Source: Oopsacas minuta (Eukaryota > Animalia > Porifera). From it: a stretch of DNA of 64,000 bases. Below the pieces are notes generated by a model. It made no database searches, was not told where the DNA came from, and worked only from the letters and a program-made list of their open reading frames with translations. The position numbers and the translations under genes are program-made. Where the stretch lies: positions 620,001 to 684,000 of the forward strand of contig JAKMXF010000044.1 in assembly GCA_024704765.1 (NCBI GenBank), given 5' to 3'. Shown here piece by piece: positions 16,578-39,504 of this stretch; the first letter of the stretch is position 1; each line of letters starts with the position of its first letter.

Positions 16578-19500
16578 TCACTTCATCTTTGCTTCATCTG
16601 TAATATCTTTTCTGTATTGATCGACAATCTTTTTGATTGACTTATTTGGACGGAGATCTTCTTCTTTCAGGGGTAAAAATGAGAAAGGATCATACTCGCA
16701 TCCACTCTTGATATGACTTTCAATTGCTTCCCTTTCATATGTTTCTCCTTCATTATTATTACATGGATCCACAAACAGCTCACCTGTTAGGGGACATACA
16801 TAGTCTGATTGATACATATCGCCGTCATAACTTTCAGCCTTCATTAAAATCTTCATTTTCAGATCAATTGTAGTTTTATATTGTTTAGCGTGCTTTGCCG
16901 TATAAGCCCTAGCATTAGCCGTGTACATATTAGGATTGAATTTTAGTTCAGTTGCTTTCACTGTGTCTAATGGATCGTCAGGTGCTGGATCCAGTAATAA
17001 TCCATAGACGTAATTCAAAATTTCTTTGAGTCGGATTCCCGGAGTGTAATATCGGTCTAATATTGAGTGACATACCTTCCCTGCTTGGTTTATATTGCAA
17101 TGATATATCGGAGTTATAAAGCGAATATTTGGTGGTTTAGATGGGTATTTGTCTGTGAACTCTATGAATAGGTGGAATATTCCGCCTTCATAACAAGTAT
17201 GGCTAGGTCCAGTCAAAATTAATTGCCAAAAGTCAATACTTTCTTCACAAGGAAATATTTGGAAACTTTCATGAGGTTCAGTAGCATAATACGCAAGTTC
17301 TTGTAGCAGTCGTTTTGTGTGAGTTACAGTATACACAATCTTACCTAAATGCTTCTGTCTCATGGCATATGTTAGACATTTATGCATCGTAATTGAAGGT
17401 TTTTCAAGTTTTTCAGGGGTTACATGCTCAGTGGTTTCATCGAAACTTGATGATATGTCATTCGTTAACCAACCATCACATAGTTGCTCAGTATTTAGCC
17501 CAGTCAAAAGTTGCATCATTGACATTGTATGTGAGAATTGTATATCAGCTTTATTGACCTTTCCTTTGGATTGTAATAATACAGGATCCGAATCATCACA
17601 GGGAGACAACAAGGACTTAACTTGTTTCCTCATACTTAATGTTAGCATTGGTTCATTTTCAAATATGGCCAATAGTTCTGCACATGATTTTGGCCGAAAT
17701 GAATATCCTCCAGAAGCTTTCGCTATATAATGAGTATAAGTTAACTCATTGGAGAGAATTACTGTGTCCATGATTATTCTGTGTTTGAGTAGCATGTTTG
17801 TAGCTTGCTCTGCTGTTAATTTAGACGAGTTATCATCTCCATCAGTAAGACACAGTATCCTTTTCTGTACATGAGAATACTGAGGATAAGATAAATCAAA
17901 TCCGTGAAACTCCTGAATAGCAAAATTTATAGCTTTATAAATTGCAGTCATTTGACCCGAAGGAAAGGAAGTAAATTTGTCAGAAAATTCTTTTATATTT
18001 TCTGAGATTGGATATTCGAGGGTAGAATTTTCTGTGAACAGGACTAATCCTATTGCATGTTTCAAATCGTAAGCATTTGTCCGATCTGAGAAGGCGATGA
18101 AAGCTTCAATCACAGCTTCACATCTTGTTTTGCCATTTTCATATTCATGTTTCATTGAACCACTAGTATCTAGCAATACAAGAGTAACTTCTTCGGGATC
18201 CCTCGTAAGCCTACCCATATCATCCCTAGGTTTCCTATTGCACTGCTTTAGGATATCCATACATTTCGGAGGATTGCTTTTTAATACTTTATCAAGTATA
18301 TCTACATCAAATAGATTTTCTTTACCAGTTAATACATCAAAATAAATATAATTCCTGCTTCCATCTTTCGCATCACTAATGTAAACTCCTATTTCAACAT
18401 TATTTATGGGCAACATTGCTGGTGGGGTGCATTCAGATGATTTTACAAGTAATGGTGCCTGAATACAAAGTGGTGGATAGTTTTTAAACTCGATAGTAAG
18501 TTGTTTCCACTCAGGTGTTAAATCAACGCCACAAGGATGCATTTGCACACGTTTCCACACAACAGCTTCATCTGTTAAAAAAGATGTAGTTAATCTTTTA
18601 AACCAAAGAGTTATTTCTGCATTTTCTTTTTCCCCCTTATAATATTTTTTGTCAATTATATGTTTTCCTGGAGAATTTGTTACAGCCAAAGGATTTTCTA
18701 ATTTTTTACCTGATGCATTGTCAATTAGGCTGATTGTTTCGAAATTCTCTGTATTTCCATGGTACACCTCAGCTCTCGATATCAAAAAAGCCCAGAATAA
18801 GTTAGTATACTCTGCTACCTCACTGTCTTGAACCACTGCTCCTATAAATCCCTTTTCCTTGTATTGTTTAGGTTTGATGTTTTGAAAAAGATGCATCAGG
18901 ACTTCTGTTATTGCAGCTATATGGGGTAAAGTTATATTTATCTTTGAGAACAATAAATATAGAGAATGGATTAGAGGAGGACAACCAGTGATACTTCTTA
19001 TATGCCCCAGCGTCTCTAAACATAATCTGTCATTGTTGTTTTCATACATCCAATCAGAAAGTGAATAGAGACAACTGAAGAATTGGCTTATTCCGTATTT
19101 ACTTTGCTGATTGTGCCAGCATGGGTGGTATTGTACGAAACTAAAATTATTACACCATAAAGATTCCCAAAATTCTTGTGGTGTAAAGAATTCTATGACT
19201 GAGCCTTTAATGATTGGTACATTTAGGGTACTCAATGAATGGTCAGTTGTTGGTTTAAATATCAATTCATTATTTGCTTTAATCTGAATTAGATGTGCAG
19301 GTATTCCTGTTATTTCTTGTATACTATTACACAACTCATAGTAGGTTCCTTTACAACAATTTGTTTTGATTGTATAATCAATAGTTAGGACATGTACCTT
19401 GTCCTTTCCTTTCGGTAACTTATTAGTTGTATGCATAATCTGACAATCTGTGTATATCTTAGGACGAGGTATAGCGTATAGCAATCGATTATCGTTATAT

Positions 19501-19790
19501 TCTTCTAAGCACCAGTCAGATAGTTTGCGTATATATGCCCCTGGGTAAGTAGCAAGAGGATAGCCTTCACAGCTGTACAATTCTACTGTCAGTTCTTCTC
19601 CTAAGATATCTCTTTCCCGTATGCAAATCATATTTACTAAATCATAATAACGTAATTCAGTCGTATTAATGGAGCTAATAACGTTGAGAGGTGGCTGAAG
19701 AGTTGTGAAGAGTTGATAATTGATATCCATCTTTAATCTCTTTGATTGCAGCCTCGACAGTTCTTCGATATCTTCTTCGATGGTAGGCTT
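16578..19790 (-). CDS. Paralogue 1, main exon: 2x Ubl-like - helical - vWA - UBC (E2) - U-box
   Basis: vWA LLDTSGSM...TAIYKAI...CLTDG; E2 PPNIRFITPIYHCNINQAGKVCHSIL; U-box VCPLTGELFVDP...GETYEREAI. The frame stays open 60 nt upstream of the track ATG (19730) to a phase-0 acceptor TATAATTTAG at 19791-92. Confidence 0.9.
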   Translation of the reverse strand, partial: KPTIEEDIEELSRLQSKRLKMDINYQLFTTLQPPLNVISSINTTELRYYDLVNMICIRERDILGEELTVELYSCEGYPLATYPGAYIRKLSDWCLEEYNDNRLLYAIPRPKIYTDCQIMHTTNKLPKGKDKVHVLTIDYTIKTNCCKGTYYELCNSIQEITGIPAHLIQIKANNELIFKPTTDHSLSTLNVPIIKGSVIEFFTPQEFWESLWCNNFSFVQYHPCWHNQQSKYGISQFFSCLYSLSDWMYENNNDRLCLETLGHIRSITGCPPLIHSLYLLFSKINITLPHIAAITEVLMHLFQNIKPKQYKEKGFIGAVVQDSEVAEYTNLFWAFLISRAEVYHGNTENFETISLIDNASGKKLENPLAVTNSPGKHIIDKKYYKGEKENAEITLWFKRLTTSFLTDEAVVWKRVQMHPCGVDLTPEWKQLTIEFKNYPPLCIQAPLLVKSSECTPPAMLPINNVEIGVYISDAKDGSRNYIYFDVLTGKENLFDVDILDKVLKSNPPKCMDILKQCNRKPRDDMGRLTRDPEEVTLVLLDTSGSMKHEYENGKTRCEAVIEAFIAFSDRTNAYDLKHAIGLVLFTENSTLEYPISENIKEFSDKFTSFPSGQMTAIYKAINFAIQEFHGFDLSYPQYSHVQKRILCLTDGDDNSSKLTAEQATNMLLKHRIIMDTVILSNELTYTHYIAKASGGYSFRPKSCAELLAIFENEPMLTLSMRKQVKSLLSPCDDSDPVLLQSKGKVNKADIQFSHTMSMMQLLTGLNTEQLCDGWLTNDISSSFDETTEHVTPEKLEKPSITMHKCLTYAMRQKHLGKIVYTVTHTKRLLQELAYYATEPHESFQIFPCEESIDFWQLILTGPSHTCYEGGIFHLFIEFTDKYPSKPPNIRFITPIYHCNINQAGKVCHSILDRYYTPGIRLKEILNYVYGLLLDPAPDDPLDTVKATELKFNPNMYTANARAYTAKHAKQYKTTIDLKMKILMKAESYDGDMYQSDYVCPLTGELFVDPCNNNEGETYEREAIESHIKSGCEYDPFSFLPLKEEDLRPNKSIKKIVDQYRKDITDEAKMK

Positions 19791-20795
19791 CTAAATTATA
19801 AGGATCAGCGAGAAATCAATGCATCTATATCAGTAGTTCTAACCGGTGTGACACGGCCCACTTGTGTGTCTCAGAAACTTTTTAAGCGGGCCACACTAAA
19901 GTCACTAATATACTGTCCAACCCTCCCGATTTCGTTTGCCAATCCTGACTCCCGACGCAAGTCCCGTCGGGAGCTATATAAACCCGATTTGGCGTATTAT
20001 CTCCCCATTCAATCCGATATTCTACATTGTTAATTCAATATAGATAGTCGTTAATAGTATTGTATGGATAATGAGGGATATTTAATTAAAATATGGGAGT
20101 CAACAGTTGTCATTATGTACTGATTTCTGATTATATATGATTTGACAACATATTATTATTGGCTAATAGTAATAATTACTTAGAAATTCGAATATAGCTA
20201 TCTACAAAACTGATTTTCCATATTCTGTCATAAATAATATAGCACAAATTCAAATTTGTTTACTATACGCGTATATTCATAAAAACAACAAATAAATGTA
20301 AATATGATTAATTCAAAAGTGAAAATTATATTTAGTATAGTTTATAGTATAGTTTGCTGTTTAGTATAGTATAGTATCAATCCTCTCCTTGACAACTGAC
20401 AAACAGACAGACAAAAAAATGCAATTTCATAATATAGATTTCCAAAGAATCACCTATGTATCTATACTATTCAAAAGTAATTTAGAGAGAAGTTACGATC
20501 TTTGCAAACACATTAACAAAAATTATGATGTAATTTTCATCCTTTTGAATATCGAAAATCACATTATCACACATTACTCAGCCAACATAAATGATAGAAG
20601 ATTGAAAGTTCATCATAGGCGCCCCTCAACACACCAAATGTACCGATGTCACGGTTTTACCAATTGCAAAAATCATTGGAATATTATGTCATCATTATTA
20701 TACAAAAATTAGCAAATAACATTGCAAAATTTCTGCTAGTAAGTATTCATGTGTAATTACAAAATACATTAAATTCAATCTATTAATTAACTCAC

Positions 20796-20999
20796 TTTAT
20801 AATTCTCTACCATCTTCATGAAACGATTTGCCTCTAATAATGACATTCCAATATCATTGGTCAATACATCTTTGTCTACCCCATCCAGTATATCTATTAC
20901 ATCGTGCGCGCCTTGGTTCTTGAAATTGGCGAAATATTTCCCAAAATTGTGATTTTTTAAGAATATGAATAACTCATTGTCGCTGTTTTTCGATGCCAT
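20796..20999 (-). CDS. Paralogue 1, exon 1: SAM domain
   Basis: MASKNSDNELFIFLKNHNFGKYFANFKNQ...DIGMSLLEANRFMK has the SAM pattern and ends at a canonical GTGAGT phase-0 donor (20795), in frame with the 19790 exon (~1138 aa total). Confidence 0.8.
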
Positions 21000-21702: not shown

Positions 21703-22035
21703 CTAGCTCAGAATATGTAGGGTATAATCAGAGTTAGGATAGATTATACTCTCTGCCTTTATCATGTTATGTGCAAAGTGTGAGGTGTCTGGTGTCATCT
21801 ATGTATTCATAAAAGCCCGCCATACACAATGCAAAATTGTTGCATGAAAACGCAACATAACATTGTTGCACCATGTAAATTACTTTCTTGTATGCAACAA
21901 ATTTGCATCGCTTATGGCGGGCTTTTATGAATACACAGATGACACCAGACGCCCCACACTTTTGCACATAACATAATAAAAGCAGAGAGTATAATCTGTC
22001 CTAACCCTGATTATACCCTGTATATTCTGAGCTAG
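21703..22035. mobile_element. Foldback element, ~143-bp imperfect inverted arms
   Basis: CTAGCTCAGAATATGTAGGGTATAATCAG... versus ...CTGATTATACCCTGTATATTCTGAGCTAG; arms ~21703-21845 and ~21892-22035. Confidence 0.85.
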
Positions 22036-23621
22036 CCCCCCTCATACCCGGGGTTAAACTGGGTGGGGAGGTTAATCTAAGCTGTTACACCGGCACTGTA
22101 GCCACCCCTTTACATAAATTATATCCAATTATTAAACAATTTTGGGAATCTATAAATTCCCAAAATTCTTGGATAATTGGATATAATTTTATTAAATTGC
22201 TATTTTTGTCTGTTTGTTTGTCTGTTGTCAAGGAAAGGATTTATGGAATGTTGTTTTGAATTCAAATTTCTCAATTCTGAGATGTCACATAATTATCTAC
22301 TTACCGTCAGGGGGCGGATGGCAGAAAAGCTGGTGGGGGAAATAATTATCCAGCTGGGGTTCTGGGATCGCTGTAAGCCCCCCAGTGGGGTCCAGGCCAT
22401 ATTTACTATCACTTAAGTTGTCTTTCTACTGTCAAGTAACTTCGAAACTCGAAATTAACAAAGTTATGTTTAAAATTTGTTTTAAACTGCACGAACGTAT
22501 CATAATATATTTGTGTTGTTGTCTTTGCTCTTATTAATTGTACATACTCAGCGTTACAGCTCACACTCTTCCGTCGTAGATCAATACAAGGTAATAATCT
22601 GAGAATTGTCAAATATAATCATATATTGAGGATAAAATGCGAGCGAAGCGAGCAGAAAATTTCTTGGTTTGCATTTGTTGAATTGTTTCTGTGTATTGAC
22701 AAATATTTTCAGTATCATTATGATTCCATATCATGTATATTTAATTATTTATCCTGGTGGGGGATGCATCCCCACATCTCCCCATAGATCTACTCATGCT
22801 TACCATGCTTACCAACAAAATATACATAATTCAACAAAACTTGGCTAAATACCACGAATATGCTGAATCCGATTTTCACACTGTTGAATTTATCATATGT
22901 AAATTTATTTGTTATATTATGAATATAAAGTAAACAAATAGTTGAAATCTGTAAATATAGGTAGAGACTTGCTCTTAATGTCTGCAATGGTGTAACAAAG
23001 TACTCTGATTCCGAATTTCATACTCTCAAGGTACTCGTGTGTAATTCATAACAGTATATAATGGATATAGTGATAACGCTGGGGTACAAATATTTGGGCC
23101 AATATATCACTACGTATATCCAATACATTTTGTATGGGATAAAAAACAGTAAAAACAGTTCTTCCAGAGGGTGAGGGTGATAATTTGTATTCGCAACTTG
23201 TGGAGTGTTTTCTAGCCTATCAATGAACCTTAATTCCCTGAAAAATCGAAACACGGTCAATCATATGTTGATTACTGTTTTCTAAACAAAGTATTCTATA
23301 TCAATTAATTTACGAGCAGTACGAGCGAGCTGGAAGAATATTCTCACACTCCATGCCGTGAACAGGCCCTGAGATGACGCTCCAAGGGGCCTCCAAAATC
23401 TATATTTCATCGAATAATCATCACAGTAATTGGGTAATATCGCTAATATGTACTTATTCCCTACGGGAAAGTGGATGCTTTTAGAGTGGAATTTAATAAA
23501 TAATGTGATGCAATCCAGCCTTTCCTGAAATAAACCAAACAGTTTCCTACTTTTATTTGGTATATGCGTGTACATATTTTCCTATTTTGGCTATCCATTA
23601 ATTTTCAATATGTATATAGCA

Positions 23622-23831
23622 ATGTCTTCCTCTGACAGCGAAATAACTGAGTTCCTTAATAAGCTAAAGTTACTCAAATACAAAGATAAGTTTAGAGAAG
23701 ATGGTCCTCATTATGTTGAGAATGTTGGAGACTTTATTCGTTTTCTTTCAGAACTGAATTTATTAAAAGAAATTGGTATGACTGTTTTCGAAGTTAACAG
23801 ATTCAAAAGACTTTGTGAAAAAACAATTGAG
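23622..23831 (+). CDS. Paralogue 2, exon 1: SAM domain
   Basis: MSSSDSEITEFLNKLKLLKYKDKFRED...EIGMTVFEVNRFKRL is SAM-like and similar to the paralogue 1 exon. Probable phase-0 donor GT at 23832 (GTTGAG, weak). Confidence 0.7.
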
Positions 23832-24726
23832 GTTGAGTTTATTACTTAGATACAAACAAACGCGAATAAATTTAATTAAGTTAAAGTACAGTAACCTTTA
23901 TATGTGGATGTATAAGTTCCCAGGAAAGCCAAAATATGAAGGCAGCTTTGATTAATGATTATAGCTTCAGCCCGATTAATACAGCTGTTGATCCTATTAA
24001 ATTTATACTTTTTGTTTGATTCTGTTAACAGCCAAGTTACCTAAATCAACTGGTAGCTCAATATGGCGGGGTTTTGAAATACTTAACCTCTTCATTTGTC
24101 CTTCAATATATTGCAATTCATTGCAATCACTTACAGTACGTAATGAATATATTCATATTTTGTTCGTTGATTCTTGTGCCCGTTTACAGTATACTCCATA
24201 CAATATTTATTGAATATAGTGATATATTGGTTATAGTGATATTTTGGCCCAAATATCTGTGTTCCCAGTGTTATCACTATATCTATTATATATTGTAAAG
24301 AGTTCAAACGGCGATCCATCATTGCGTTTTAGTTAAGGTATTTTGTAACTTACTTGAGTAATATCTAAATCATTTTAGTAAAATCTTATTTTGCTGTCTG
24401 TTTGTCCTTTCGTTTGTTTGTTTGTTCTTTCGTCGTCAAGGAAAGTATTTATAGTATGCTATTTGATTTTTAATTTCGCAATCCTGTCTATTTCGCACTG
24501 TAAGTTATCGTGTTTACTGTTAATTAAATAATATCAAATATACTGAATACAACTCTATTGAAACGATAATATGAATATTTTCAGTTAATTTTTTGAAATG
24601 TAAATAAAATTTAAATTATTAGTAGAGTTTACAGAAAAAATGGAGATTTCCAGATCTACTATTCCATCTGGAAATTTCGTGTAGAATTGGATAATTCATA
24701 TATTTCAATTCTAATATATTCCAAAG

Positions 24727-27700
24727 GAATTCGATAATGCAGAACGTATCCAAATATCCAAACCCAGAACAGAGGATAAATTCGGTGAGGCTATCAATGG
24801 AAAAGATACAGCTCCTAAATATTGCAGTGCACGATTTTCAAATTTGAACGTATTGAGAATAAGAACGAAAATATTAACCCAAGAACATATCTTAAGAAAA
24901 TCTACAGTTGTAATTACTGTTGACCTATCATGGTTGTATTACCAGTTAATTTCAATGATTCACAAATCATTACAGAGAGATGTACATGGGATTGTCTTTG
25001 AAAGTGTAGAATTATATTCTGCTACAGGATACCCATTAGCTCTGAACCCACCCAAATATTTTGAACAAATATCCAAATGGAATTTAGAACAAAATGATCT
25101 GTTGTACATTTACCCAAAGAAAATACAATCAGAGAAGATTATTTCTTATACACGATATAAGGATCCATTTCACATCAAAGTTAGAATTGAGAAGATGGAT
25201 GTTTCTATCCAAATAGAGTTACGCCATGTTGTGATATTCTGTTGTGATCTCAAAACTCTCATTTCTTTACAGCTCCATTTACCAGCAGAAATACTAACAT
25301 TGCAATTTCTTTACATTAATGACAACATAAAAGAAAAACCTGATGATAGATTGGAACTGGAGTTAAAGCAAGTTGAAGATGAACATATATTAATCTCAGT
25401 ACAAATACTAGAAAGTTTCTGGAAAGGTGATAGCTATCTGGGTGCATTCAAAAGTAGTTTATACACTAGTTGTATTCCTCAAAATATGAGTGATTGGGAT
25501 TGTTTCAATTGTTTACTTCTCTACTTATCCAGAGTTAAAACGAATATAGGCAGAGAACGCTTGTTGTCTATGCTAGGTCTTGTCCGTAGAATATCTTGTT
25601 CTCCTCCTTTAGTATTATCACTACATAGATTGCTCAACGAATCTAAACTATATCTCCCTCACAGAGTTGCTATTAATGAAGGTATCATCACCACTCTGTC
25701 TCTTCTCATTTCGGAATCTAATCCTGGAATAGAGAATTTCTCTATGTTTTGGATGTATTTAGAAAAGTATGCAGAGAATAAACATAAAGATACAGAAGTA
25801 TACGAGACACAATATATCTCGAAATACACTAGAGAGAGCCCTAAGGATCATGAAATAAAGAAACTACTACAAGCTTTCCCAGAAGCAGAAGATGTCATTG
25901 TCACTTGGAGAAACTGTCCTTCTGCTTATGAGCCATTTCTATACAGAGGATTATCTGTAACAGAATTCTCACAAAACAAAATTATGCAAAGATTCCCACT
26001 GAAACATCCCATTGAATTATACCAAGAATTCATCAATAACGGTGATAATTATGGGTTGTTACGGCCACCATCACAACTCAGTAGTTATTATATATTCCTC
26101 GGTCGTACAAAGGGAAGGTATGGATATTTCGACTTCTTTAATCCTAATGATGGAGAACGTGTTTCATGGAATCCTCAAGATAAAATCACTTCAGAAAATC
26201 TGCATATTGAAAACACCAAACAATACCAAATGCTGATAATCATCCTAGATATCAGTAAGGACATGGATTACGGATGTTATGAATATTCTGCTGGGCGTGA
26301 TGCTAAAGAACCAAACCTAATAACTAGTTCTTTAGAAATGGCATTAAGGATAATTGAACTGCTTGTGGACAGTTTGATAGGTTTGAATTGTAAATATTTG
26401 CTAAGTATTATTCTCATATCTAATAGTCACCAACAATTCATACGTGGCGTCAATGTGTTTCAACCGCTTACATTAGAATATGTTAAGACATTGCACAGAT
26501 TGAGAGAATTTTTAGAGACAACCCCTTTAAATGAGAATCCTTACAAGCGCAAGCCTTCACAAGGTATAATTGTTAACGCATTATTCCTTTTAGTAGATGA
26601 ATTTAAGCCATACGAGAATACTACTCAAGTTTTTCTACTTACAAATCATTATTCTGAACGTAAGTACTATGGTTCTAAACAAAACAGTATAGTACAGAAA
26701 TTGACTCATCATAAATTCGTATTAAATGCATTAATCTTATCTGATCATAAGTCTCACAATTTGTCAGAAATATGTGCAGCTACCAAAGGGAAATATTTCG
26801 ATCAGATCAATATAACAAATTTACAACAAAGTCACGAGAAAATATCCTCACACTATTTACTGGAATATTCTTCCCTAATTCAAGATATTGTAAATCCGTT
26901 AAACTTGGATAGCTATAAGATGATACTTTCTGATTTCAGTAAGAAACTCTCAAGCTCTGAGTCTGTATTAGAATCAGCTCAAACAAAAAAAGAAAAAGTA
27001 TATACTTATTTATTTCAATCCAAGAAGATTCCAAACATAATATACATATTAAAGCTTATATCCAACTACCTCAGAAGCCCTAATCCTTATTGTAAGATAT
27101 ATTCAATACATGATAATATTCTAAATTGGATTACTATCATCCAAGGACCTGAAAATTCTCCTTATCAAAAATCAATAATGTTTTTAGAATTCAGTTTTGG
27201 AATAGATTTCCCACGAAAACCTCCAACATTTCGTTTCCTCTCCTATCACTACCATCCAAATATCAGAAAAACTGGAGAAATTTGTCATCCCATCATAATT
27301 GAAGATTATCATCCTAATATTACTCTGAGACAGATGCTAGATTCTATATACGATATGCTATGTTTTCCTATTCCTTCTCACGCTGTCAGGTACAAAGTAT
27401 TTGAGATTTTTGTATTCTATTTTGATGTATTTAAAAGATTAGTAGAATCGTTTATAGAAGTTTTCGGATCACATTTAACCTTAACTGATTGTTTGCAAGA
27501 TTTATGTATCAAAGAATCATTGAATGTTCATCCAGAGCCATTTCTCTGTCCTCTCACAGGAGAATTATTCGACTCACCAATGATTACCCGAGAAGGTGAT
27601 TCCTATGAGCGTCATGCTATCCTACAGCATCTGAAACATCATCAATATGATCCTCTCACTAAAAAAATTCCTCTAACAGAAGCTGACTTAATACCGAATA

Positions 27701-27771
27701 CTGCATTGTTGAGTGCTGTTCATAAGTACAGAAAAAAGTGTTGTGAAAAAGAATACTGGTGGGAGCATTAA
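24727..27771 (+). CDS. Paralogue 2, main exon: 2x Ubl-like - helical - degenerate vWA - UBC (E2) - U-box
   Basis: ELYSATGYPL motif shared with paralogues 1 and 3; ILDISKDM; PPTFRFLSYHYHPNIRKTGEICHPI; FLCPLTGELFDSP...GDSYERHAI. The frame is open upstream of the track TTG (24844) to an acceptor CCAAAG at 24725-26. Confidence 0.88.
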   Translation, partial: EFDNAERIQISKPRTEDKFGEAINGKDTAPKYCSARFSNLNVLRIRTKILTQEHILRKSTVVITVDLSWLYYQLISMIHKSLQRDVHGIVFESVELYSATGYPLALNPPKYFEQISKWNLEQNDLLYIYPKKIQSEKIISYTRYKDPFHIKVRIEKMDVSIQIELRHVVIFCCDLKTLISLQLHLPAEILTLQFLYINDNIKEKPDDRLELELKQVEDEHILISVQILESFWKGDSYLGAFKSSLYTSCIPQNMSDWDCFNCLLLYLSRVKTNIGRERLLSMLGLVRRISCSPPLVLSLHRLLNESKLYLPHRVAINEGIITTLSLLISESNPGIENFSMFWMYLEKYAENKHKDTEVYETQYISKYTRESPKDHEIKKLLQAFPEAEDVIVTWRNCPSAYEPFLYRGLSVTEFSQNKIMQRFPLKHPIELYQEFINNGDNYGLLRPPSQLSSYYIFLGRTKGRYGYFDFFNPNDGERVSWNPQDKITSENLHIENTKQYQMLIIILDISKDMDYGCYEYSAGRDAKEPNLITSSLEMALRIIELLVDSLIGLNCKYLLSIILISNSHQQFIRGVNVFQPLTLEYVKTLHRLREFLETTPLNENPYKRKPSQGIIVNALFLLVDEFKPYENTTQVFLLTNHYSERKYYGSKQNSIVQKLTHHKFVLNALILSDHKSHNLSEICAATKGKYFDQINITNLQQSHEKISSHYLLEYSSLIQDIVNPLNLDSYKMILSDFSKKLSSSESVLESAQTKKEKVYTYLFQSKKIPNIIYILKLISNYLRSPNPYCKIYSIHDNILNWITIIQGPENSPYQKSIMFLEFSFGIDFPRKPPTFRFLSYHYHPNIRKTGEICHPIIIEDYHPNITLRQMLDSIYDMLCFPIPSHAVRYKVFEIFVFYFDVFKRLVESFIEVFGSHLTLTDCLQDLCIKESLNVHPEPFLCPLTGELFDSPMITREGDSYERHAILQHLKHHQYDPLTKKIPLTEADLIPNTALLSAVHKYRKKCCEKEYWWEH

Positions 27772-32480: not shown

Positions 32481-32849
32481 TCCTATATATATATTAATTG
32501 CGTTTTAATAGTATAGATGGCAGTGCTCGACGAATCCAGTGCTTTGGTGGCTATAGCCACCAGAATTTTTTCTTAAGCCACCAAAAAATATTGTATTTTG
32601 GCTTAGTAATGCTAGATGGTGGATAGTCATCAATTTTGTCGAGCGCTGATAGATGGGTCATTATCAGGGCTCTCAAGTCTCAACCTGGAAACTTCGTCAT
32701 AAATTTCAACATTTTATCGTGATACATGCAATTTAGGTACTAATTAGTTTTCTATAGTATTTGTATACTCGAAATCGTGAGAGTTGAGACCCCTGCATTA
32801 TAATTGTTGGACATACGTATGCTCCATTACAGCAGTTTATTTCAACAGC

Positions 32850-34088
32850 ATGGCTGAGAGGAAGTATGATTTGCTCCTCTACAACACTAACAAGTATAAT
32901 CAAGATCAGCCTAAGCCTCAGCCATGGTACAAAGAGCGTATACAAACTAAATTCCTACAGGCACACCGATCACTAGCACTTGATTCTTCTCAATGGAAAC
33001 TATTCAAGAACAATCCAGATGATTTTAGAGATGGAATCCCTCCCTCCTCTGAAGATATTCTATCTCCAAACTCATCTCATCTCCACCTCCCACTGATACA
33101 CATAACCAAAACACCTAACTCTATTCCATCGCCTAATTGGGAAGGGAAGAAGATAAGAAAGAAAGATGCTCTCTACTGCAGAGCTCTCCCCGCTCAACAG
33201 AAGCGTAGAGAATATATACAAGCTCTTGAGGTTGAGTTAACCTCGCATCCTACACAACTGTATCCTCATCTGATGGAGGCAATACCGCACCAGTTACAAT
33301 CTCGTTATAATGACGTCATATCTACAGACAGTTCTGCTCCTTTTACAGATAAACATAAGAGTATTACGTCACCCCTCGATTGTCCTACACCCTCCTCCTC
33401 TAAGAAATCATATCTCTCTTCAGCTACAAGTGAGGTTCAGTCAGAGATAGAATTAGGGGAGCTATACAGATTTCCTTCTCTCAAATCTACGAACAGAAGC
33501 AGATCTGTTTCCTCTGATTGTGAGCCAGTAGAGTCACGGGAAACAGATGAGCTTACTCTCCTTACTGAGGATCTATGCTCATGGGCTAATCACCTGAGTG
33601 ATAATGATGATTCCTTAGAACCCTCTCATATACGAGCTCTCTTCAGTAATACTTTTGATAACAACAAACTGGCAACTCTGGCACCAGTACAAGTTGTAGA
33701 TCTATCTAACATACCTGGAGAACTCAAAGTAACACTAATAGACACAAATGAAAGGAACGATACTCAACTCAACAAACCCTGGCAGCCGAATTCTGTCAGC
33801 TGTCAAATAGTACCTGCTAAACCTGTCCGTACCAAATACGGTGAGTGGTATATACCGGTACATTTGTGGAGAGCCCGACCTAAACACGAGCATCTTAACC
33901 TTCCCAGTATCCAGGAGCGGGAGCAGAGTAGGAAGATAGGGAGGATGGCAGAGCTAGATAAGGAGATATCAGAGTTACACAGTGCTTCTCTCTTCCTCAA
34001 ACATCTACAAAAGAAGTCATATAGTAATCAGAAGGTACATATCCCATCCTTCTTGGGGCTCAGAGAACGTAACTCTCTATCCAGCTAG
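32850..34088 (+). CDS. FAM47: FAM47-like protein
   Basis: LDSSQWKLFKNNPDDFRDG, QQKRREYIQALEVELTSHPTQLYPHL and KYGEWYIPVHLW match FAM47-family blocks. The likely start is MAERK at 32850 rather than the track's 32784. Confidence 0.7.
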   Translation: MAERKYDLLLYNTNKYNQDQPKPQPWYKERIQTKFLQAHRSLALDSSQWKLFKNNPDDFRDGIPPSSEDILSPNSSHLHLPLIHITKTPNSIPSPNWEGKKIRKKDALYCRALPAQQKRREYIQALEVELTSHPTQLYPHLMEAIPHQLQSRYNDVISTDSSAPFTDKHKSITSPLDCPTPSSSKKSYLSSATSEVQSEIELGELYRFPSLKSTNRSRSVSSDCEPVESRETDELTLLTEDLCSWANHLSDNDDSLEPSHIRALFSNTFDNNKLATLAPVQVVDLSNIPGELKVTLIDTNERNDTQLNKPWQPNSVSCQIVPAKPVRTKYGEWYIPVHLWRARPKHEHLNLPSIQEREQSRKIGRMAELDKEISELHSASLFLKHLQKKSYSNQKVHIPSFLGLRERNSLSS

Positions 34089-34240: not shown

Positions 34241-34268
34241 ATTATTATTATATAATATACGTATAGCG

Positions 34269-34734: not shown

Positions 34735-34775
34735 GTATAGCGTATGAATAATACTTTGCTTATTTATTTAGATAA

Positions 34776-35717
34776 ATGTCTGAGTCTACGCATAAGAAGA
34801 GCATTGAATTGATAGACGCAATAGAAGCTATTCTACAACACAAATCATGTCCTCTCTCACTCGACTATCTATCTCTTAAACTACAGAAGAAGTATACTAT
34901 GAAATCAGTTCAGAGGACAGCATTCGTTAACATGGTACATACTGAAATATCAAAATATCCGCACAGAATATATTCTATTGAGAATGGACTGTATGTACTC
35001 GCTAATCCTCCGCTACATGAGCGTAGTACTCTCATCCTACCTGAGACTCAAAGTAACGTGTATTCAGAATCTGAATCTACTCGTAGTGACTCTGTACAGG
35101 TACCAGGTTGTGATGAAGAGCTGGAGATTTACCGACTGACACAGGAAGTAGCTTTGCTTAGAGAAGTTACCACCGGCTGTCTGGCATGGAATCACAGTCT
35201 AGTTGGAGTTATTAGTGATCGTAGGAGAGAACTACAAGAGGTAAATACAGACGTGAATCTGTTACTCGCATATCATCATACTATGAAGGAGACTAAACCA
35301 AAGAGTTATCCTCACAAGAAGAAATATAACAAGAAATACGGAAAGAGTACCAGGAAGTTATCTGCTTCTGGGAAGAGAAATAAAAAACGGATAATGGCCT
35401 CAGAAAGAAAGCACAAACTTAAAGTTATGTCTGTCAAGAAATCCAAATTAAATTCTACTTCAAAGAATCCTATATCTTCTCCTTATAAGCTCAATTCCCG
35501 TAGAAATTCTCCTCAATCAAGTGAGGAGTTTCCCTCTAATCATAACTCTCAGACTAATTCTTCTGGAGCTACTAATTACACTATACCATGTCATTCTCCT
35601 TCCCCTACCCCACTCTTAGATACCACTGATAATTCTGAATCTGTAATTCCTACAATATTTGACGAGAATTCTACTTCTAACAACAAGGAAGATATTACTT
35701 CAAGTGATTCTGATTAA
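34776..35717 (+). CDS. Protein with N-terminal HARE-HTH-like winged helix, coiled coil, and Lys- and Ser-rich tail (313 aa)
   Basis: LIDAIEAILQHKSCPLS...MVHTEISKYPHRIYSIENGLYVL follows the ASXL/HARE-HTH pattern by eye; the basic tail is NLS-like. Confidence 0.5.
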   Translation: MSESTHKKSIELIDAIEAILQHKSCPLSLDYLSLKLQKKYTMKSVQRTAFVNMVHTEISKYPHRIYSIENGLYVLANPPLHERSTLILPETQSNVYSESESTRSDSVQVPGCDEELEIYRLTQEVALLREVTTGCLAWNHSLVGVISDRRRELQEVNTDVNLLLAYHHTMKETKPKSYPHKKKYNKKYGKSTRKLSASGKRNKKRIMASERKHKLKVMSVKKSKLNSTSKNPISSPYKLNSRRNSPQSSEEFPSNHNSQTNSSGATNYTIPCHSPSPTPLLDTTDNSESVIPTIFDENSTSNNKEDITSSDSD

Positions 35718-36042
35718 ATGATGGGTGTAACCGAATTAACATTTCAATAGTTTGAAAGATTCTACAAATTTCGAAAGTGCACCACAATTCAAAAAGGTTG
35801 AGGATTACAAACTTAATGCTACCATAACATGTCCAATAAATATCACAAGCAACATAATTTGATAATCAAACAGATTTGGTTCATTTTTCCAGAATATGTA
35901 AAATGATACCCTGAATCTTTGTATTCTCTATTCTAATTATTGGATTGTTGTATTTATAGAATCTTTCATTGTTATTTATATAAAAGCCTTTATTGGATTG
36001 ATTTAGATATTACTAACCATCTACATACATAGCTGCGCATCA

Positions 36043-39000
36043 ATGTCATTTGATAAAGTCGTAGAGTTCCTAACTGAACTCCGCTTGCAAACCTTTGCTG
36101 ATAAATTTGGAGATTTGGGAGTGACTATACTAGCAGATCTTAAATATGTTCAGGAGGAAGATCTAGATGCGATGGGGATGAAGAAGATACATAAAAATAA
36201 GTTTTTACAAAATATTAGTAAGATTACTGACTTTGTAGTAGAAAAGCCCAGTGTTCCTGTGGTACCTTCAGCCCCTCCTATTATCCCTGTCATCGTTCCC
36301 AGTGCCCCAGTTCTCAGTTCACCAATCCCCAATGCACCTGTACCTGTACCCATATCAGCACCTGTGCCGAGTGCACCACCCCCGAGTGGAGCTACTCCCA
36401 TAGCGGAGGCAATATCAATCGTGTCTGGCTCCAACTTCCTAAACTACCACATCTACAGATCTCTCCAGCCGGAGCGCAGAGACATAACAGGACTAGATTT
36501 TGAGCATACTACCTACGGACAGTTGAAACAGCTGATTAGTGACCAGGAAAAATTAGGAACTAGTGTAACTGTTGAATTATTCGCTCCCGAAGGCTATCCT
36601 CTAGCTCCAGACACACATAACTACGATAAGAGTCTAAAGGAATGGCATTTCTCAGACGGAGACCTCATCCTCGCCATTCCATGCAGAGCTAGCATGGTTA
36701 AGATTCAGACCCTCCCTGAACTGCACCCAGATACAGGAGATACACAAATATTCGTAAAATATAACCGTACATACGTCATCAATGTAGATATGGCTACTGA
36801 TACTGGTAATACCGTTAGACAGAAGTTATATAGTAAATTACAGATACCTACTCCCTCTATCAAGCTATCATATGCTGGTAAGCCTATCAAGCCTGACAAT
36901 ACTCTACTACAGGATTACGGAGTATGTAAGAACTCTACACTACATATGTGGTTCTACGGAGTAACCTGGGTTAACTCATGGGCTCAAAACTTCTCTTCTC
37001 GTCTCTGTCTTCCTCTGATAGATCAGAGTGAGGAAGGTCTCTCTCTATTTAACTCAGTCCTCTATGTAGTGTCAATGCATTTCGTGTCTGAAACAACCGC
37101 GAGGATTAACAAGGTGCTGGGACACATCAGGAGGATAACAAAATGTCCTCCTCTAGTCTGTGCGCTGGACCGTCTCTTCAGGAAGAGAACTCTCTCCTTC
37201 CCTCAGAAAGTAGCTATCCAGGAATCTCTCTACCAGCTATTCAGAGCTCTTCTACCACAAGACACAGATAAACCAATAACTAATTTACATGTGTTTGAGA
37301 AGTCCAGTGAGTGCTGGGCCTTCTTAATGACTGAGAGTTTGGATTCTGACAGATATTCAGAGGAATATGCTCAGACAGACCTAACATGCTGTATCACCAA
37401 ACAGAGACTCAAAGTTCCTATCTGTCTGCCTGGATCTCAGCTCATCTACGAGAGAGAACAGATTGAAGAATGCATAAAGAACAAAGATACTATCCCTGGT
37501 GTAGATGTGAACACCATAACTCTGGGACAAATTACTGAGAGTAAGAAGTGTCTACGTCTGTTGATGAGTGTTACTGAGGAGACTGAAGCTATGGTTTGGA
37601 GCAAAGGAGGGAAGTCTCTATACGAGCTGCCTAATATACACAAACCTCAATTCAACTGTACCCCAGTAGAGTTGAAGGATAAAATGAAACAGATCAGCTG
37701 TTTAGAAGTAATACCGCCCCTCAAAATAAAATCAATCAGTAGCACATACAGACTCACTACTAACTCAGAAGGTAACGTTATTGTGTATCTAGAGAGAAAT
37801 CCTTGTGGTACACCAGGTAGTGACTGGATATTCTATGATCCTGCTCAGGGTAATGAGTGTGATAAGAATCCAGACGAGCTAGCTAACAAGGCTGGTACTA
37901 GCTCAACTGGTACCTCTTCTCTTCCTTCTTCTGGATATACTCCCGCTGCTGAGCCAATTGTAATAGTAGCAGCTCCTCCTGAGGTTATAACACGCCCTCC
38001 AGAGGAGGCTATCATTGTCCTCCTGGATGTCAGTTGGTCTATGGATGAGGAGTATGAACACGGCATGACACGCTTGCAAGCTGTTAAACAGCTGTTCCAC
38101 GCGTTTGCTAACAGATCCATGGCTTATAACCTGCACAATGTGATAGGACTTACTCTGTTCGCTACTGACATAAAGGTACACTCTAGAGTAACAGAGCTGT
38201 TTGAGAGGTTCAAACAGAAAGTTGATATTGTAATGGCAGAAGGTAGGACCAAACTTTATGACGCTATTATAGAAGGTATTAGACAGCTAACAGAGTTCAT
38301 GGAGAAATATAAGGAATGTAGGAAGAGGATTATTTGTCTCACGGACGGAGAGGACTGTCTTTCTAAGAAGACCCCTCTCCATACAGCTAGACTAGCTCTA
38401 GAGAACCAAGTGATAGTAGACTCCATACTTATAGGGAGTGGTAATCGTAAGATGAAAGCTATCTCTATGGCTAGTGGGGGGTGCTGCTTCCTGCCCCCCT
38501 CTCTCACAGAGGCTCTCAAACTGTTCGAGATGGAGGAAGTTCTTACTCTAGCAAATCGTCAGATAAAACCTCTGTGTCAGCTAGACCTACTCACTGAGTC
38601 TCTCCTCCGTAGAATTGAGAATCCTACTCTCTACAAATATAATGAGAAACCTCCTCGTTTAATCCCTCAAGAGCTTGATGCTCCTGTCGTGTCAGTACGT
38701 ACTAAGCTACAGAGAGCAGCTAATGGACCTGTCCTCACCCCAGGGGGCGGGGGAGAAGAGAGAAGGGTCAGGAGGATACTGAAGGAACTCTCTATCATGC
38801 AGCGAGAGAAACATCCTAACCTAGAGCTATATCCTAATGAGAATGACGTAGGTTTCTGGCGTATGTTATTAACAGGCCCAGAGTTCACGCCCTACCAGAG
38901 TGCGGTATTCCTCCTCTACGTACGGTTCCCCCTCAACTATCCGGAGGGTCCCCCTGAGATCCGCTTCATCACACCTATCTACCACTGTAACATCAACAGC

Positions 39001-39504
39001 AGTGGACGTATTTGTCACAGTGTGTTCGGCAGGAACTACACTAGTGACATGGAGTTCAGAGCACTTATGGATTGTGTGTTCGGACTATTGTGTGAACCTG
39101 AGCCCGGGGATCCTCTGGACAGTAACATGGCCGAGGAATACTTCAGTCGTAGACAGGAGTATAATCAGATGGCTGAGAATTGGTGTGTACATCACTGTAA
39201 GAAGCAACTAGAGGTGTGGAGAGCTGAGTTCGTGTCTGAGGAAGAAGCAGCTCATTCTATTATTCCTGCTAGTATTGTATGCCCTCTCTGTGCTGAGATA
39301 TTCTTAGATCCAGTACAAACTCCGTATGGAAACACTTATGAAAGACAGGCTATAGAGGACCATATAGATGCGGAAGGGAATGACCCCTTAGCTTACAAAC
39401 CCCTCACCAAGGACCAATTATCCCCTAATCTCGACAAGAAGCGAGAAGTGTCCCAGTACAATCAGGAATGTAATATCACTGGCTGGTGGGATGCAGCACA
39501 CTAA
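36043..39504 (+). CDS. Paralogue 3 (intronless): SAM - Pro-rich linker - 2x Ubl - helical - U-box-like - vWA - UBC (E2) - U-box, 1153 aa
   Basis: SAM FLTELRLQTFADKF...MGMKKIHKNKF; Ubl TQIFVKY...KLSYAGKPIKPDNTLLQDYGVCKNSTLHM; vWA LLDVSWSM...TKLYDAI...CLTDG; E2 PPEIRFITPIYHCNINSSGRICHSV; U-box VCPLCAEIFLDPVQTPYGNTYERQAI. Confidence 0.93.
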   Translation: MSFDKVVEFLTELRLQTFADKFGDLGVTILADLKYVQEEDLDAMGMKKIHKNKFLQNISKITDFVVEKPSVPVVPSAPPIIPVIVPSAPVLSSPIPNAPVPVPISAPVPSAPPPSGATPIAEAISIVSGSNFLNYHIYRSLQPERRDITGLDFEHTTYGQLKQLISDQEKLGTSVTVELFAPEGYPLAPDTHNYDKSLKEWHFSDGDLILAIPCRASMVKIQTLPELHPDTGDTQIFVKYNRTYVINVDMATDTGNTVRQKLYSKLQIPTPSIKLSYAGKPIKPDNTLLQDYGVCKNSTLHMWFYGVTWVNSWAQNFSSRLCLPLIDQSEEGLSLFNSVLYVVSMHFVSETTARINKVLGHIRRITKCPPLVCALDRLFRKRTLSFPQKVAIQESLYQLFRALLPQDTDKPITNLHVFEKSSECWAFLMTESLDSDRYSEEYAQTDLTCCITKQRLKVPICLPGSQLIYEREQIEECIKNKDTIPGVDVNTITLGQITESKKCLRLLMSVTEETEAMVWSKGGKSLYELPNIHKPQFNCTPVELKDKMKQISCLEVIPPLKIKSISSTYRLTTNSEGNVIVYLERNPCGTPGSDWIFYDPAQGNECDKNPDELANKAGTSSTGTSSLPSSGYTPAAEPIVIVAAPPEVITRPPEEAIIVLLDVSWSMDEEYEHGMTRLQAVKQLFHAFANRSMAYNLHNVIGLTLFATDIKVHSRVTELFERFKQKVDIVMAEGRTKLYDAIIEGIRQLTEFMEKYKECRKRIICLTDGEDCLSKKTPLHTARLALENQVIVDSILIGSGNRKMKAISMASGGCCFLPPSLTEALKLFEMEEVLTLANRQIKPLCQLDLLTESLLRRIENPTLYKYNEKPPRLIPQELDAPVVSVRTKLQRAANGPVLTPGGGGEERRVRRILKELSIMQREKHPNLELYPNENDVGFWRMLLTGPEFTPYQSAVFLLYVRFPLNYPEGPPEIRFITPIYHCNINSSGRICHSVFGRNYTSDMEFRALMDCVFGLLCEPEPGDPLDSNMAEEYFSRRQEYNQMAENWCVHHCKKQLEVWRAEFVSEEEAAHSIIPASIVCPLCAEIFLDPVQTPYGNTYERQAIEDHIDAEGNDPLAYKPLTKDQLSPNLDKKREVSQYNQECNITGWWDAAH

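What the first reader, a model, noticed from the sequence alone, without database searches (positions are those of the whole stretch)
16578..39504. Cluster of three divergent single-chain SAM-Ubl-Ubl-vWA-E2-U-box proteins: a candidate self-contained ubiquitination system
Seen: three ~1080-1150 aa paralogues (16578-20999 minus, 23622-27771 plus, 36043-39504 plus) share a domain order and private motifs: EL(Y/F)xxxGYPL, LG(H/L)(I/V)RxI..(C/S)PPL, E2 H(C/P)N...C, and a C-terminal U-box. Established: a U-box activates an E2~Ub conjugate, SAM domains often polymerise, and vWA MIDAS sites bind ligands. Inference: each chain couples ligand sensing (vWA), oligomerisation (SAM) and an E2+E3 cascade needing only E1. 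Local expansion plus strong divergence is typical of immunity/conflict genes, so this may be an undescribed sponge defence or signalosome system. Neither Ubl ends in di-Gly, so they look like integral domains rather than conjugatable modifiers.
Basis: partly seen in the sequence, partly recalled or inferred. Interest (0 to 1): 0.9.

Follow-up and report, generated by a model that had tools for sequence, protein, structure and literature searches.

The report
Three single-chain E2–U-box ubiquitin ligases
Three neighbouring glass-sponge genes each encode, in one chain, a ubiquitin-conjugating enzyme joined to a U-box ligase domain and a vWA binding domain; they belong to a large, unstudied family found across eukaryotes, not to a sponge-only invention.

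Summary
The window is from Oopsacas minuta. It carries three expressed genes (LOD99_14351, LOD99_14352 and a third) for proteins of 1138, 1084 and 1153 aa with the order SAM, two Ubl, vWA, UBC, U-box.

An E2 with intact catalytic Cys and HxN, fused to a canonical U-box, fits a self-contained E2/E3 ligase. It is not a sponge novelty. The vWA-UBC core with a U-box or RING occurs in lamprey, several teleosts, ciliates, parabasalids, Trimastix, an amoebozoan and fungi (468 clusters at E<1e-30). I found no paper that characterises it.

The three genes are old paralogues (about 28% identity), and gene order is conserved in related sponge assemblies. The second gene type has a metal-less vWA, no internal U-box and an altered E2 gate residue. 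It lay next to a MIDAS-intact type in all seven loci inspected.

In two related assemblies a roughly 170-codon block of this pseudo-vWA exists as two ancient lineages shared across samples. That favours long-term maintenance of two variants. It is the only evidence for a recognition or conflict role. Biochemistry is untested.

The parts
16578..19790 (-). Gene 1 (LOD99_14351, type A) main exon: Ubl-Ubl-helical-internal U-box-beta-vWA (MIDAS intact; VWA_2 about 17838-18185)-UBC (16902-17312; catalytic Cys codon 17070-17072)-U-box (16608-16802)
   Evidence: ORF and Pfam; splice joint; identical to P0201; motif positions
20796..20999 (-). Gene 1 first exon, SAM-like domain (68 aa)
   Evidence: Donor AAA|GTGAGT and acceptor TTTAG|AAG; RNA-like joint 19790|20796; SAM_2 E 0.005, below threshold; exon conserved in L002
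21000..23621 (.). Shared divergent upstream region of genes 1 and 2; contains high-copy repeats
   Evidence: Head-to-head first exons. The same arrangement is seen in L002, L003, L005, L008 and L009
23622..23831 (+). Gene 2 first exon, SAM-like domain (70 aa)
   Evidence: Donor GAG|GTTGAG; joint 23831|24727; SAM_2 E 0.0009; 79% identical exon in L002
24727..27771 (+). Gene 2 (LOD99_14352, type B) main exon: Ubl-Ubl-helical-(no internal U-box)-beta-pseudo-vWA-UBC (27070-27411; Cys codon 27283-27285; HPN; D117 equivalent is His)-U-box (27532-27735)
26428..26931 (+). Part of the gene 2 pseudo-vWA that corresponds to the dimorphic block seen in orthologues. It aligns to gene 3 residues about 709-876, which include MIDAS loops 2 and 3.
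   Evidence: Mapping; dimorphism in relatives. Polymorphism in Oopsacas itself was not tested.
36043..39504 (+). Gene 3 (P0001, 1153 aa), single exon, with these parts:
- SAM 36043-36222
- disordered Pro-rich linker
- Ubl1 36433-36687
- Ubl2 36742-36954
- helical domain 36982-37362
- internal U-box fold 37366-37581
- beta domain 37585-37893
- vWA 38005-38547
- UBC 38749-39195 (Cys991 codon 39013-39015)
- U-box 39262-39471
   Evidence: Pfam; AF2 model pLDDT 79.9; mid-module model pLDDT 87, pTM 0.84; fold searches; RNA-like run holds 0.84 of its words

Best explanation
The three genes encode anciently diverged members of a pan-eukaryotic, uncharacterised family of single-chain E2/E3 ubiquitin ligases. 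The invariant core of the family is a vWA domain rigidly followed by a UBE2D-like UBC domain, almost always with a RING-class domain (a U-box here) in the same chain.

Proposed mechanism:
1. E1 charges the UBC cysteine: Cys991 in gene 3 and the equivalent Cys in genes 1 and 2.
2. The C-terminal U-box activates the E2~Ub. It has the canonical E2-binding layout and is closest to LubX U-box 1 and CHIP. Activation happens either in cis across the roughly 22-residue linker or in trans between neighbours.
3. The N-terminal SAM brings chains together.
4. The vWA MIDAS captures an acidic residue of the target or of a regulator. This may include the chain's own Ubl, as midasin's MIDAS does.

Gene 2 (type B) is a specialised partner of gene 1 (type A), not a redundant copy. 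It keeps the catalytic Cys and the U-box. It has a metal-less vWA, lacks the internal U-box and has His in place of the Asp117-equivalent gate residue. It sat next to a type A gene in every locus inspected, usually head to head. This suggests co-expression and a hetero-oligomer.

Shown: domain content, residue conservation, expression and splicing, phylogeny and synteny. Inferred: charging by E1, cis or trans activation, ligand capture by MIDAS, SAM-driven assembly and A-B pairing.
For: Domains and folds:
- Pfam domains at E 1e-9 to 1e-35.
- The E2 model superposes on UbcH5b at rmsd 1.2 A, TM 0.95. The nearest solved sequences are UBE2D1-3 at E 9e-30.
- The C-terminal U-box is nearest LubX U-box 1 (solved with UBE2D2) and CHIP.
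- The internal U-box fold gives Z 8.8 against CHIP. The top 47 of the 50 listed rows are RING, U-box or SP-RING domains.

Residue conservation across 84 family members:
- Catalytic Cys, His and Asn are essentially invariant.
- MIDAS D-x-S-x-S, T and D are complete in every clade except type B. There S666D, T736G and D768N are fixed.

Family-wide pattern:
- In 39 spaced representatives: UQ_con 39, VWA_2 37, U-box 27, RING-H2 types about 7. An E2 plus a RING-class domain plus vWA in one chain is therefore the family rule.
- Independent AFDB models share the vWA-UBC arrangement: rmsd 3.5-3.9 A over 278-410 residues.
- An engineered UbcH5B-RING fusion in the same domain order has been solved (8v0d). 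It is the top structural hit.
- N-terminal self-association modules are swapped across the family: SAM in sponges, and the Par3 N-terminal domain in P0018 and P0060.

Expression and pairing:
- Spliced joints and exon-biased depth in run X4. The run holds 0.84-0.99 of the words.
- Type A and type B are adjacent in the window and in L002, L003, L004, L005, L008 and L009.
Against: - No biochemical data exist for any member.
- On the E2, the residues that bind RING or U-box domains in UBE2D are not kept. The Phe62 equivalent is Glu, Ser or Arg in the three genes and varies across the family. Ser-Pro-Ala is replaced by Thr-Ser-Asp or similar. A canonical contact between the U-box and its own E2 is therefore not assured.
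- The AF2 model has pTM 0.49. Its E2/U-box arrangement differs from the solved fusion (rmsd 13.9 A over both domains), so cis docking is not shown.
- The SAM assignment for genes 1 and 2 is below Pfam thresholds.
- A-B pairing rests on gene adjacency only.
- The unusual His-Cys-Asn ... Cys-His active-site signature has no tested precedent here. It could mean different chemistry or regulation.
Confidence: 0.6

Rival explanations
1. Innate-immune, conflict or self/non-self sensor. SAM-nucleated assemblies of type A and type B chains ubiquitylate themselves or a bound ligand. The variable pseudo-vWA of type B acts as the recognition surface.
For: - In two related assemblies, a block of about 170 codons in the type B pseudo-vWA is 60-74% identical between two otherwise 98-99% identical contigs.
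- Its tree groups sequences across samples (support 98 and 100). Grouping by sample is rejected at AU p 1e-4. The rest of the gene groups by sample, and the alternative is rejected at p 4e-55.
- dS between the two block lineages is 1.1-2.2, against 0.08 in the rest of the gene.
- The family has a patchy distribution, with local arrays. Five type A and one type B representatives share the contig length 443003, and one type A and one type B are directly seen on L004.
- A TRAF-zinc-finger gene lies between a type B and a type A gene in L004.
Against: - dN/dS in the block is 0.16-0.34, so there is no sign of pervasive positive selection.
- Gene 3 is highly conserved (dN/dS 0.09).
- The three genes are old orthologous groups.
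- The two contigs per assembly could be duplicated loci homogenised by gene conversion rather than alleles.
- The groups were named after the pattern was seen.
- No induction, infection or allorecognition data exist.
- Polymorphism in Oopsacas itself was not examined.
Confidence: 0.25
2. The fused U-box does not serve its own E2. It recruits a free cellular E2 such as UBE2D or UBC13. The built-in UBC domain has a different role, for example chain elongation on a primed substrate, ubiquitin binding, or partnering the internal U-box.
For: - The C-terminal U-box has a canonical E2-binding layout. The built-in E2 lacks the Phe62 and Ser-Pro-Ala contacts.
- There are two U-box folds per chain, as in LubX, where one binds E2 and the other binds substrate.
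- Some relatives have only the internal U-box (P0098) or no RING-class domain (P0060, P0117).
Against: - A RING-class domain accompanies the E2 in about 35 of 39 sampled relatives, and U-box and RING-H2 are swapped. This is hard to explain if the two were functionally unlinked.
- The catalytic Cys, His and Asn are invariant, so the E2 is not a UEV-like pseudoenzyme.
Confidence: 0.2
3. A housekeeping role in protein quality control or at the proteasome. The Ubl domains dock the ligase on proteasomal or UIM receptors, and the vWA, which resembles that of Rpn10, acts as a scaffold.
For: - The vWA's nearest solved sequences include Rpn10 (E 9e-5).
- Tandem Ubls are typical of shuttle factors.
- The gene 3 lineage is strongly constrained.
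- The family is old and widespread.
Against: - The family has been lost from most animals and is patchy elsewhere, which is unusual for core housekeeping.
- It is multi-copy, with divergent subtypes and a dimorphic block.
- The Rpn10 match is weak and ties with a bacterial BatA-like vWA.
Confidence: 0.15

Closest known systems
UBE2O and BIRC6 (E2/E3 hybrid enzymes)
   Same: They are large single chains. A UBC domain is combined with substrate-binding regions, so no separate E3 is needed (abstract of PMC12818219).
   Different: By my own knowledge they have no RING or U-box and no vWA, SAM or Ubl array. The abstract calls them the only two E2s known to work E3-independently. The present family adds a RING-class activator in cis. 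There is no sequence relationship beyond the UBC fold.
Engineered UbcH5B-MIB1 RING3 fusion (PDB 8v0d) and other E2-RING fusions (4r8p, 7jzv, 8uq8)
   Same: 8v0d has the same order, UBE2D-type E2 followed by a RING-class domain, and is the top structural hit. It shows that such a chain can fold.
   Different: These are man-made crystallisation constructs. The relative domain placement differs from the AF2 model (rmsd 13.9 A).
U-box plus vWA ligases: Mb_UBOXa of Monosiga and protists (Marin 2010, PMC3087547), and an ESM Atlas cluster 'U-box/vWA' of about 361 aa
   Same: A U-box and an intracellular vWA share one chain. The Atlas cluster aligns to the internal U-box plus beta region. Trimastix, one of the genera named for Mb_UBOXa, has a full vWA-UBC-U-box member.
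   Different: The paper mentions no UBC domain and states the gene is absent from animals. Here the E2 is present, and sponges, lamprey and teleosts carry the family. Orthology with Mb_UBOXa could not be checked with these tools.
Plant RGLG1/2 (vWA/copine-type domain plus RING)
   Same: They are cytosolic ligases that combine a vWA with a RING-class domain (titles and abstracts; the details are my own knowledge).
   Different: They have no E2 in the chain and use a RING rather than a U-box. Homology beyond the domain classes was not tested.
Legionella LubX (two U-boxes)
   Same: It has two U-box folds in one chain. The C-terminal U-box here is most similar in sequence to LubX U-box 1, which was solved with UBE2D2.
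   Different: It is a bacterial effector of about 215-264 aa without E2, vWA, SAM or Ubl.
Bacterial vWA-MoxR ternary conflict systems with Ubl-E2 fusions (Kaur et al. 2020, PMC7159879)
   Same: The theme is shared: vWA, Ubl and E2 with a RING-type E3, in a proposed conflict context.
   Different: Those are separate genes in operons, with MoxR, E1 and JAB. They are prokaryotic. No homology was shown here, so this is an analogy only.
WDSUB1 (WD40-SAM-U-box)
   Same: It is an animal protein that combines SAM and U-box (PMC3087547).
   Different: It has no E2, vWA or Ubl, and its SAM is adjacent to the U-box.

Membership tests
UBC/E2 superfamily (Pfam PF00179) | UBC fold and a score above the Pfam gathering threshold | tested here: met
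   119.9, 83.7 and 106.9 bits against a cutoff of 27. The model is at rmsd 1.2 A and TM 0.95 to UbcH5b.
UBC/E2 superfamily (Pfam PF00179) | Catalytic Cys and His-Pro-Asn motif | tested here: met
   Cys, His and Asn are invariant or nearly so in 84 members. The Pro is replaced by Cys in all clades except type B, which has HPN.
UBC/E2 superfamily (Pfam PF00179) | Forms a thioester with ubiquitin via E1 | not testable with these tools
   This needs an in vitro charging assay.
UBE2D subfamily | E3-binding Phe62 and Ser94-Pro95-Ala96, and Asp87 and Asp117 around the active site | tested here: not met
   - Phe62 equivalent: Glu, Ser or Arg.
- SPA: Thr-Ser-Asp in gene 3, Val/Ser/Gly-Pro-Gly in gene 1 orthologues, His-Pro-x in gene 2 orthologues.
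- Leu86 and Asp87: His-Ser or His-Pro.
- Asp117: kept in types A and gene 3, His in type B.
UBE2D is the nearest family, but these genes are not members.
U-box (Pfam PF04564) | Score above threshold and a metal-free RING-like fold | tested here: met
   The C-terminal domain scores 51.8, 53.6 and 68.8 bits against a cutoff of 21.4. PDB hits are LubX and CHIP at E 1e-11 to 1e-10. The internal domain gives a fold match of Z 8.8 but only a weak sequence signal. It is absent in type B.
vWA domain with MIDAS | D-x-S-x-S, Thr and Asp metal ligands | tested here: met
   Genes 1 and 3 and all non-type-B clades have the complete set.
vWA domain with MIDAS | The same ligands in gene 2 (type B) | tested here: not met
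   S666D, T736G and D768N are fixed in 19-20 of 20 type B sequences. There is no Pfam vWA hit.
SAM domain | Pfam SAM models above threshold | tested here: inconclusive
   Gene 3 meets it (SAM_TNK 36.1 bits against 25). Genes 1 and 2 stay below threshold at 17.3 and 19.7 bits against 20.5. Polymerisation was not tested.
E2/E3 hybrid enzymes (functional class of UBE2O and BIRC6) | Ubiquitylates substrates without a separate E3 | not testable with these tools
   This is inferred only, from E2 and U-box sharing one chain.
Papain-like deubiquitinase (ZUFSP or C39-like), considered for residues 308-620 | Conserved catalytic Cys and His | tested here: not met
   The fold hints are weak: Z 6.1 to Mug105 and TM 0.30-0.35 to Peptidase_C39. 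No conserved Cys sits at the expected place and no conserved His occurs in the beta domain.

The most novel reading that the evidence does not exclude
Type A and type B chains are co-expressed from a shared divergent promoter. They assemble through their SAM domains into a self-contained ubiquitylation machine that needs only E1. The metal-free pseudo-vWA of type B is a recognition surface kept as two ancient allelic lineages by balancing selection. On this reading it is an intracellular immune or self/non-self sensor of a kind not yet described in animals, built on a pan-eukaryotic vWA-E2-RING ligase chassis.
Probability: 0.15. Interest if true: 0.85.

Novelty: new variant of a known kind. 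Interest (0 to 1): 0.6.

Why it matters
E2 and RING-class E3 functions are normally on separate proteins. The abstract seen here calls UBE2O and BIRC6 the only two E2s known to act without an E3, and by my own knowledge neither has a RING-class domain.

This family is natural, widespread and conserved, with hundreds of clusters from protists to lamprey and fish. It joins a UBE2D-like E2, a U-box or RING, and a MIDAS-type vWA. If it works as proposed, it would be a ready-made minimal ubiquitylation module. It would also be a natural experiment on cis versus trans E2 activation.

The family also bears on an earlier statement that the vWA/U-box gene lineage is absent from animals. If orthology with that lineage holds, the statement needs correcting.

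The conserved pairing of a MIDAS-intact gene with a MIDAS-less one, and the ancient dimorphism of the latter, give concrete and testable leads to function.

Tried and rejected
- Papain-like or DUB reading of the 308-620 module. Weak fold hints came from Mug105 and Peptidase_C39. It was rejected because no catalytic Cys or His is conserved.
- Test of cis docking of the U-box on its own E2. The full AF2 model has pTM 0.49, and its two-domain superposition on the 8v0d fusion gives rmsd 13.9 A. The result is inconclusive.
- Positive selection. Nei-Gojobori dN/dS is below 1 everywhere: 0.09 for gene 3, 0.2-0.4 for gene 2, and 0.16-0.34 in the dimorphic block. There is no support for pervasive diversifying selection. 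dS between Oopsacas and its relatives is about 1, so longer comparisons are saturated.
- Literature. Six full-text searches found no paper on this architecture, on the fish LOC genes or on Oopsacas. The Burroughs/Aravind E2 and Ub reviews are not held, so a mention there cannot be excluded.
- Genomic context of the salmonid gene: not on record.
- Search for extra family fragments in the window: none found.
- Taxonomic identity of the ENA assemblies: it could not be looked up. I call them related sponges only because gene order is shared.

Full report
**What is in the window.**
The window is eukaryotic, at about 35% G+C. Database names place it in the glass sponge Oopsacas minuta, assembly GCA_024704765.1.
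- Gene 3 (36043-39504, +) is a single exon of 1153 aa.
- Genes 1 and 2 are head to head. Each has a short first exon that encodes a SAM-like domain.
- I predicted the splice sites from the sequence: AAA|GTGAGT...TTTAG|AAG for gene 1 and GAG|GTTGAG for gene 2.
- Run X4 then gave exactly these joints, 19790|20796 and 23831|24727, both GT..AG. X4 behaves like an RNA library, with depth high on exons and low or zero between them.
- The second joint corrected my first guess for the gene 2 acceptor. From 24727 the frame is open into the main ORF.
- The spliced products (1138 and 1084 aa) equal NCBI models LOD99_14351 and LOD99_14352.
- X4 also holds 0.84 of the sampled words of gene 3 and 0.99 of gene 2. 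All three genes therefore appear to be transcribed.

**Domain content.**
Pfam gives the following:
- Gene 3: SAM, ubiquitin, VWA, UQ_con and U-box.
- Gene 1: VWA_2, UQ_con and U-box.
- Gene 2: UQ_con and U-box only.

An AF2 model of gene 3, built on 26 homologues, has mean pLDDT 79.9 and resolves these parts:

| Part | Residues |
|---|---|
| SAM | 1-60 |
| Disordered Pro-rich linker | 64-129 |
| Ubl1 | 131-215 |
| Ubl2 | 234-304 |
| Helical domain | 314-440 |
| Small alpha/beta domain | 442-513 |
| Beta domain | 515-617 |
| Second linker | 617-646 |
| vWA | 655-835 |
| UBC | 903-1051 |
| U-box | 1074-1143 |

A separate model of residues 308-620 is confident (pLDDT 87, pTM 0.84). Its residues 136-206 are a U-box/RING fold. 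The best Z is 8.8, to CHIP. The top 47 of the 50 listed rows are U-box, RING or SP-RING domains. The helical and beta parts have no convincing relatives outside this family. A papain-like reading was rejected for lack of conserved Cys and His.

**Catalytic and binding residues.**
The E2 is closest to UBE2D1-3 (E 9e-30). It superposes on UbcH5b at 1.2 A. I checked key positions across 84 family members:
- The catalytic Cys and the His and Asn of the HPN motif are essentially invariant.
- The Pro is replaced by Cys and the residue after the catalytic Cys is His. This gives a family signature, H-C-N ... C-H. Type B has H-P-N ... C-H.
- The Asp117 equivalent is kept in all clades except type B, where it is His.
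- The UBE2D residues that contact RING or U-box domains (Phe62 and Ser-Pro-Ala) are not kept.
- The MIDAS ligands (D-x-S-x-S, T, D) are complete in every clade except type B. There three substitutions are fixed.

The C-terminal U-box is canonical in all three genes (C-P-L, D-P, G-x-T/S-Y-E-R, P-N). It is closest to LubX U-box 1 and CHIP. Type B lacks the internal U-box.

**Distribution.**
A word-indexed search found close and distant relatives, including uncharacterised proteins of salmonids, Umbra and Dallia. An exhaustive HMMER search of 1.84 billion representatives gave 468 proteins at E<1e-30, and most matched the vWA-UBC stretch. Named members include:
- Vertebrates: Coilia, Conger, Lampetra planeri.
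- Protists: Trimastix marina, Mastigamoeba balamuthi.
- AlphaFold DB matches that I recognise from their accessions (the table masks organism names): Paramecium, Tritrichomonas and fungi.

A Pfam census of 39 spaced representatives gave UQ_con 39, VWA_2 37, U-box 27, RING-H2 types about 7 and ubiquitin 9. Other relatives carry WWE, RabGAP-TBC or a Par3 N-terminal domain. So the core is vWA plus UBC, nearly always with a RING-class domain, and the oligomerisation and accessory modules vary. Independent AFDB models share the vWA-UBC arrangement (rmsd 3.5-3.9 A). This suggests a fixed composite module.

**Literature.**
I found no paper on this architecture. Marin (2010, PMC3087547) described a vWA plus U-box gene of Monosiga and several protists and stated it is not present in animals. 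Whether that is the same lineage could not be checked.

**Age and linkage of the three genes.**
Gene 1 and gene 3 are 28.5% identical. Gene 2 is more distant. In a tree of 86 proteins the three fall into three separate clades with full support. Each clade contains sequences from other sponge-like assemblies, and vertebrates form a fourth clade. Nearest-orthologue identities by gene:

| Gene | Nearest-orthologue identity |
|---|---|
| Gene 3 | 80-87% |
| Gene 1 | 63-70% |
| Gene 2 | 49-63% |

Gene order is the same on four contigs of two ENA assemblies. The order is gene 1(-), two head-to-head SAM exons, gene 2(+), a FAM47-like gene, a roughly 315-aa ORF, then gene 3(+). A second Oopsacas contig carries another type A/type B pair, head to head and about 180 nt apart. 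In another assembly a type B and a type A gene are neighbours with a TRAF-zinc-finger gene between them. This is an old, conserved cluster with a recurrent A-B pairing. It is not a recent fast-evolving local expansion. Arrays of type A genes do occur elsewhere.

**An unexpected dimorphism.**
I compared the two contigs of assembly ERZ25071281.
- Flanks and genes 1 and 3 are 98-99% identical. The gene 3 pair has dS 0.017 and dN/dS 0.09.
- A block of about 500-970 nt inside the type B gene falls to 60-70% identity. The same is seen in ERZ25069837.
- In this block (about 170 codons) the proteins group across samples: P0242 with P0244 and P0243 with P0245. In the rest of the gene they group by sample.
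- IQ-TREE supports both topologies (98 and 100 against 99 and 100). AU tests reject the alternatives, p 1e-4 and p 4e-55.
- Between the two block lineages dS is 1.1-2.2 and dN/dS is 0.16-0.34. Within a sample the rest of the gene has dS 0.08.
- The block aligns to residues 709-876 of gene 3. That is the part of the vWA carrying MIDAS loops 2 and 3, plus the start of the linker to the E2.

The simplest reading is two ancient allelic lineages kept across two species. The alternative is two duplicated loci homogenised everywhere except in the block. Either reading implies that both forms are maintained. Two caveats apply. I named the groups after seeing the pattern.

**Mechanism.**
The sequence and comparative data fit a self-contained E2/E3 ligase.
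1. E1 charges the UBC Cys.
2. The fused U-box activates E2~Ub, in cis or between SAM-linked neighbours.
3. The MIDAS face of the vWA binds the target or a regulator.
4. Type B is a specialised, probably co-expressed partner whose metal-free vWA face varies.

Charging, activation geometry, ligand capture and assembly are all inferences. The missing Phe62 and SPA contacts on the E2, and the unplaced U-box in the AF2 model, keep open the rival that the U-box serves a free E2. The immune or recognition reading rests only on the dimorphism, the patchy distribution and the arrays. I give it about one in four.

**Verdict.**
The family is an uncharacterised, widespread variant of the E2/E3-hybrid theme rather than a sponge invention.

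Noticed in passing
L002 11225-12194, L005 (same gene), L008 11616-12170, L009 (same gene); corresponds to window 26428-26931: An ancient dimorphic block lies in the pseudo-vWA of type B orthologues. It is 60-74% identical between contigs that are otherwise 98-99% identical. The block tree groups across samples, and the rest of the gene groups by sample.
   Followed up: yes
L003 6183-13337 (Oopsacas JAKMXF010000019.1): A second type A/type B pair in Oopsacas lies head to head about 180 nt apart. The type A gene is annotated as two models (893 aa and 209 aa) that meet near 6812-6856, which suggests a small intron or a frameshift. A USP8-like deubiquitinase gene lies 2.3 kb downstream of the type B gene.
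   Followed up: partly
L004 917-13877: In another sponge-like assembly a type B gene and a type A gene are on the same strand, with a TRAF-zinc-finger gene between them. A stray U-box fragment and a Ty3-type retroelement lie nearby.
   Followed up: partly
window 32784-34088 and 34776-35717: A FAM47-like gene and a 313-aa ORF sit between genes 2 and 3. Both keep that position in every related contig seen. The ORF has only weak HARE-HTH-like feature hits.
   Followed up: partly
window 21931-22304 and 22679-23052: Summed contig depth reaches 13,000-70,000 in the region between the two SAM exons, against about 100 around it. There are also many repeat-type joints. High-copy repeats or transposon pieces appear to lie in the shared upstream region.
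   Followed up: no
window 39013-39018 and family-wide (gene 3 residues 981-983, 991-992): The active site has a family-specific signature, His-Cys-Asn ... Cys-His, instead of His-Pro-Asn ... Cys-Leu-Asp. The four Cys and His residues might bind a metal or be redox-sensitive. This is unexplained.
   Followed up: partly
P0018, P0060 (relatives): Some relatives carry a Par3 N-terminal (PB1-like, self-associating) domain where the sponge proteins have SAM. This hints that N-terminal self-association matters for the family.
   Followed up: no
window 44089-46419, 47669-48697, 49422-51572, 12734-13669, 62801-63937: Ordinary neighbours: an MTBP-like gene, a protein kinase, Vps52, an SNF-family transporter exon and a family A DNA polymerase. 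None has an evident link to the ligase genes.
   Followed up: no
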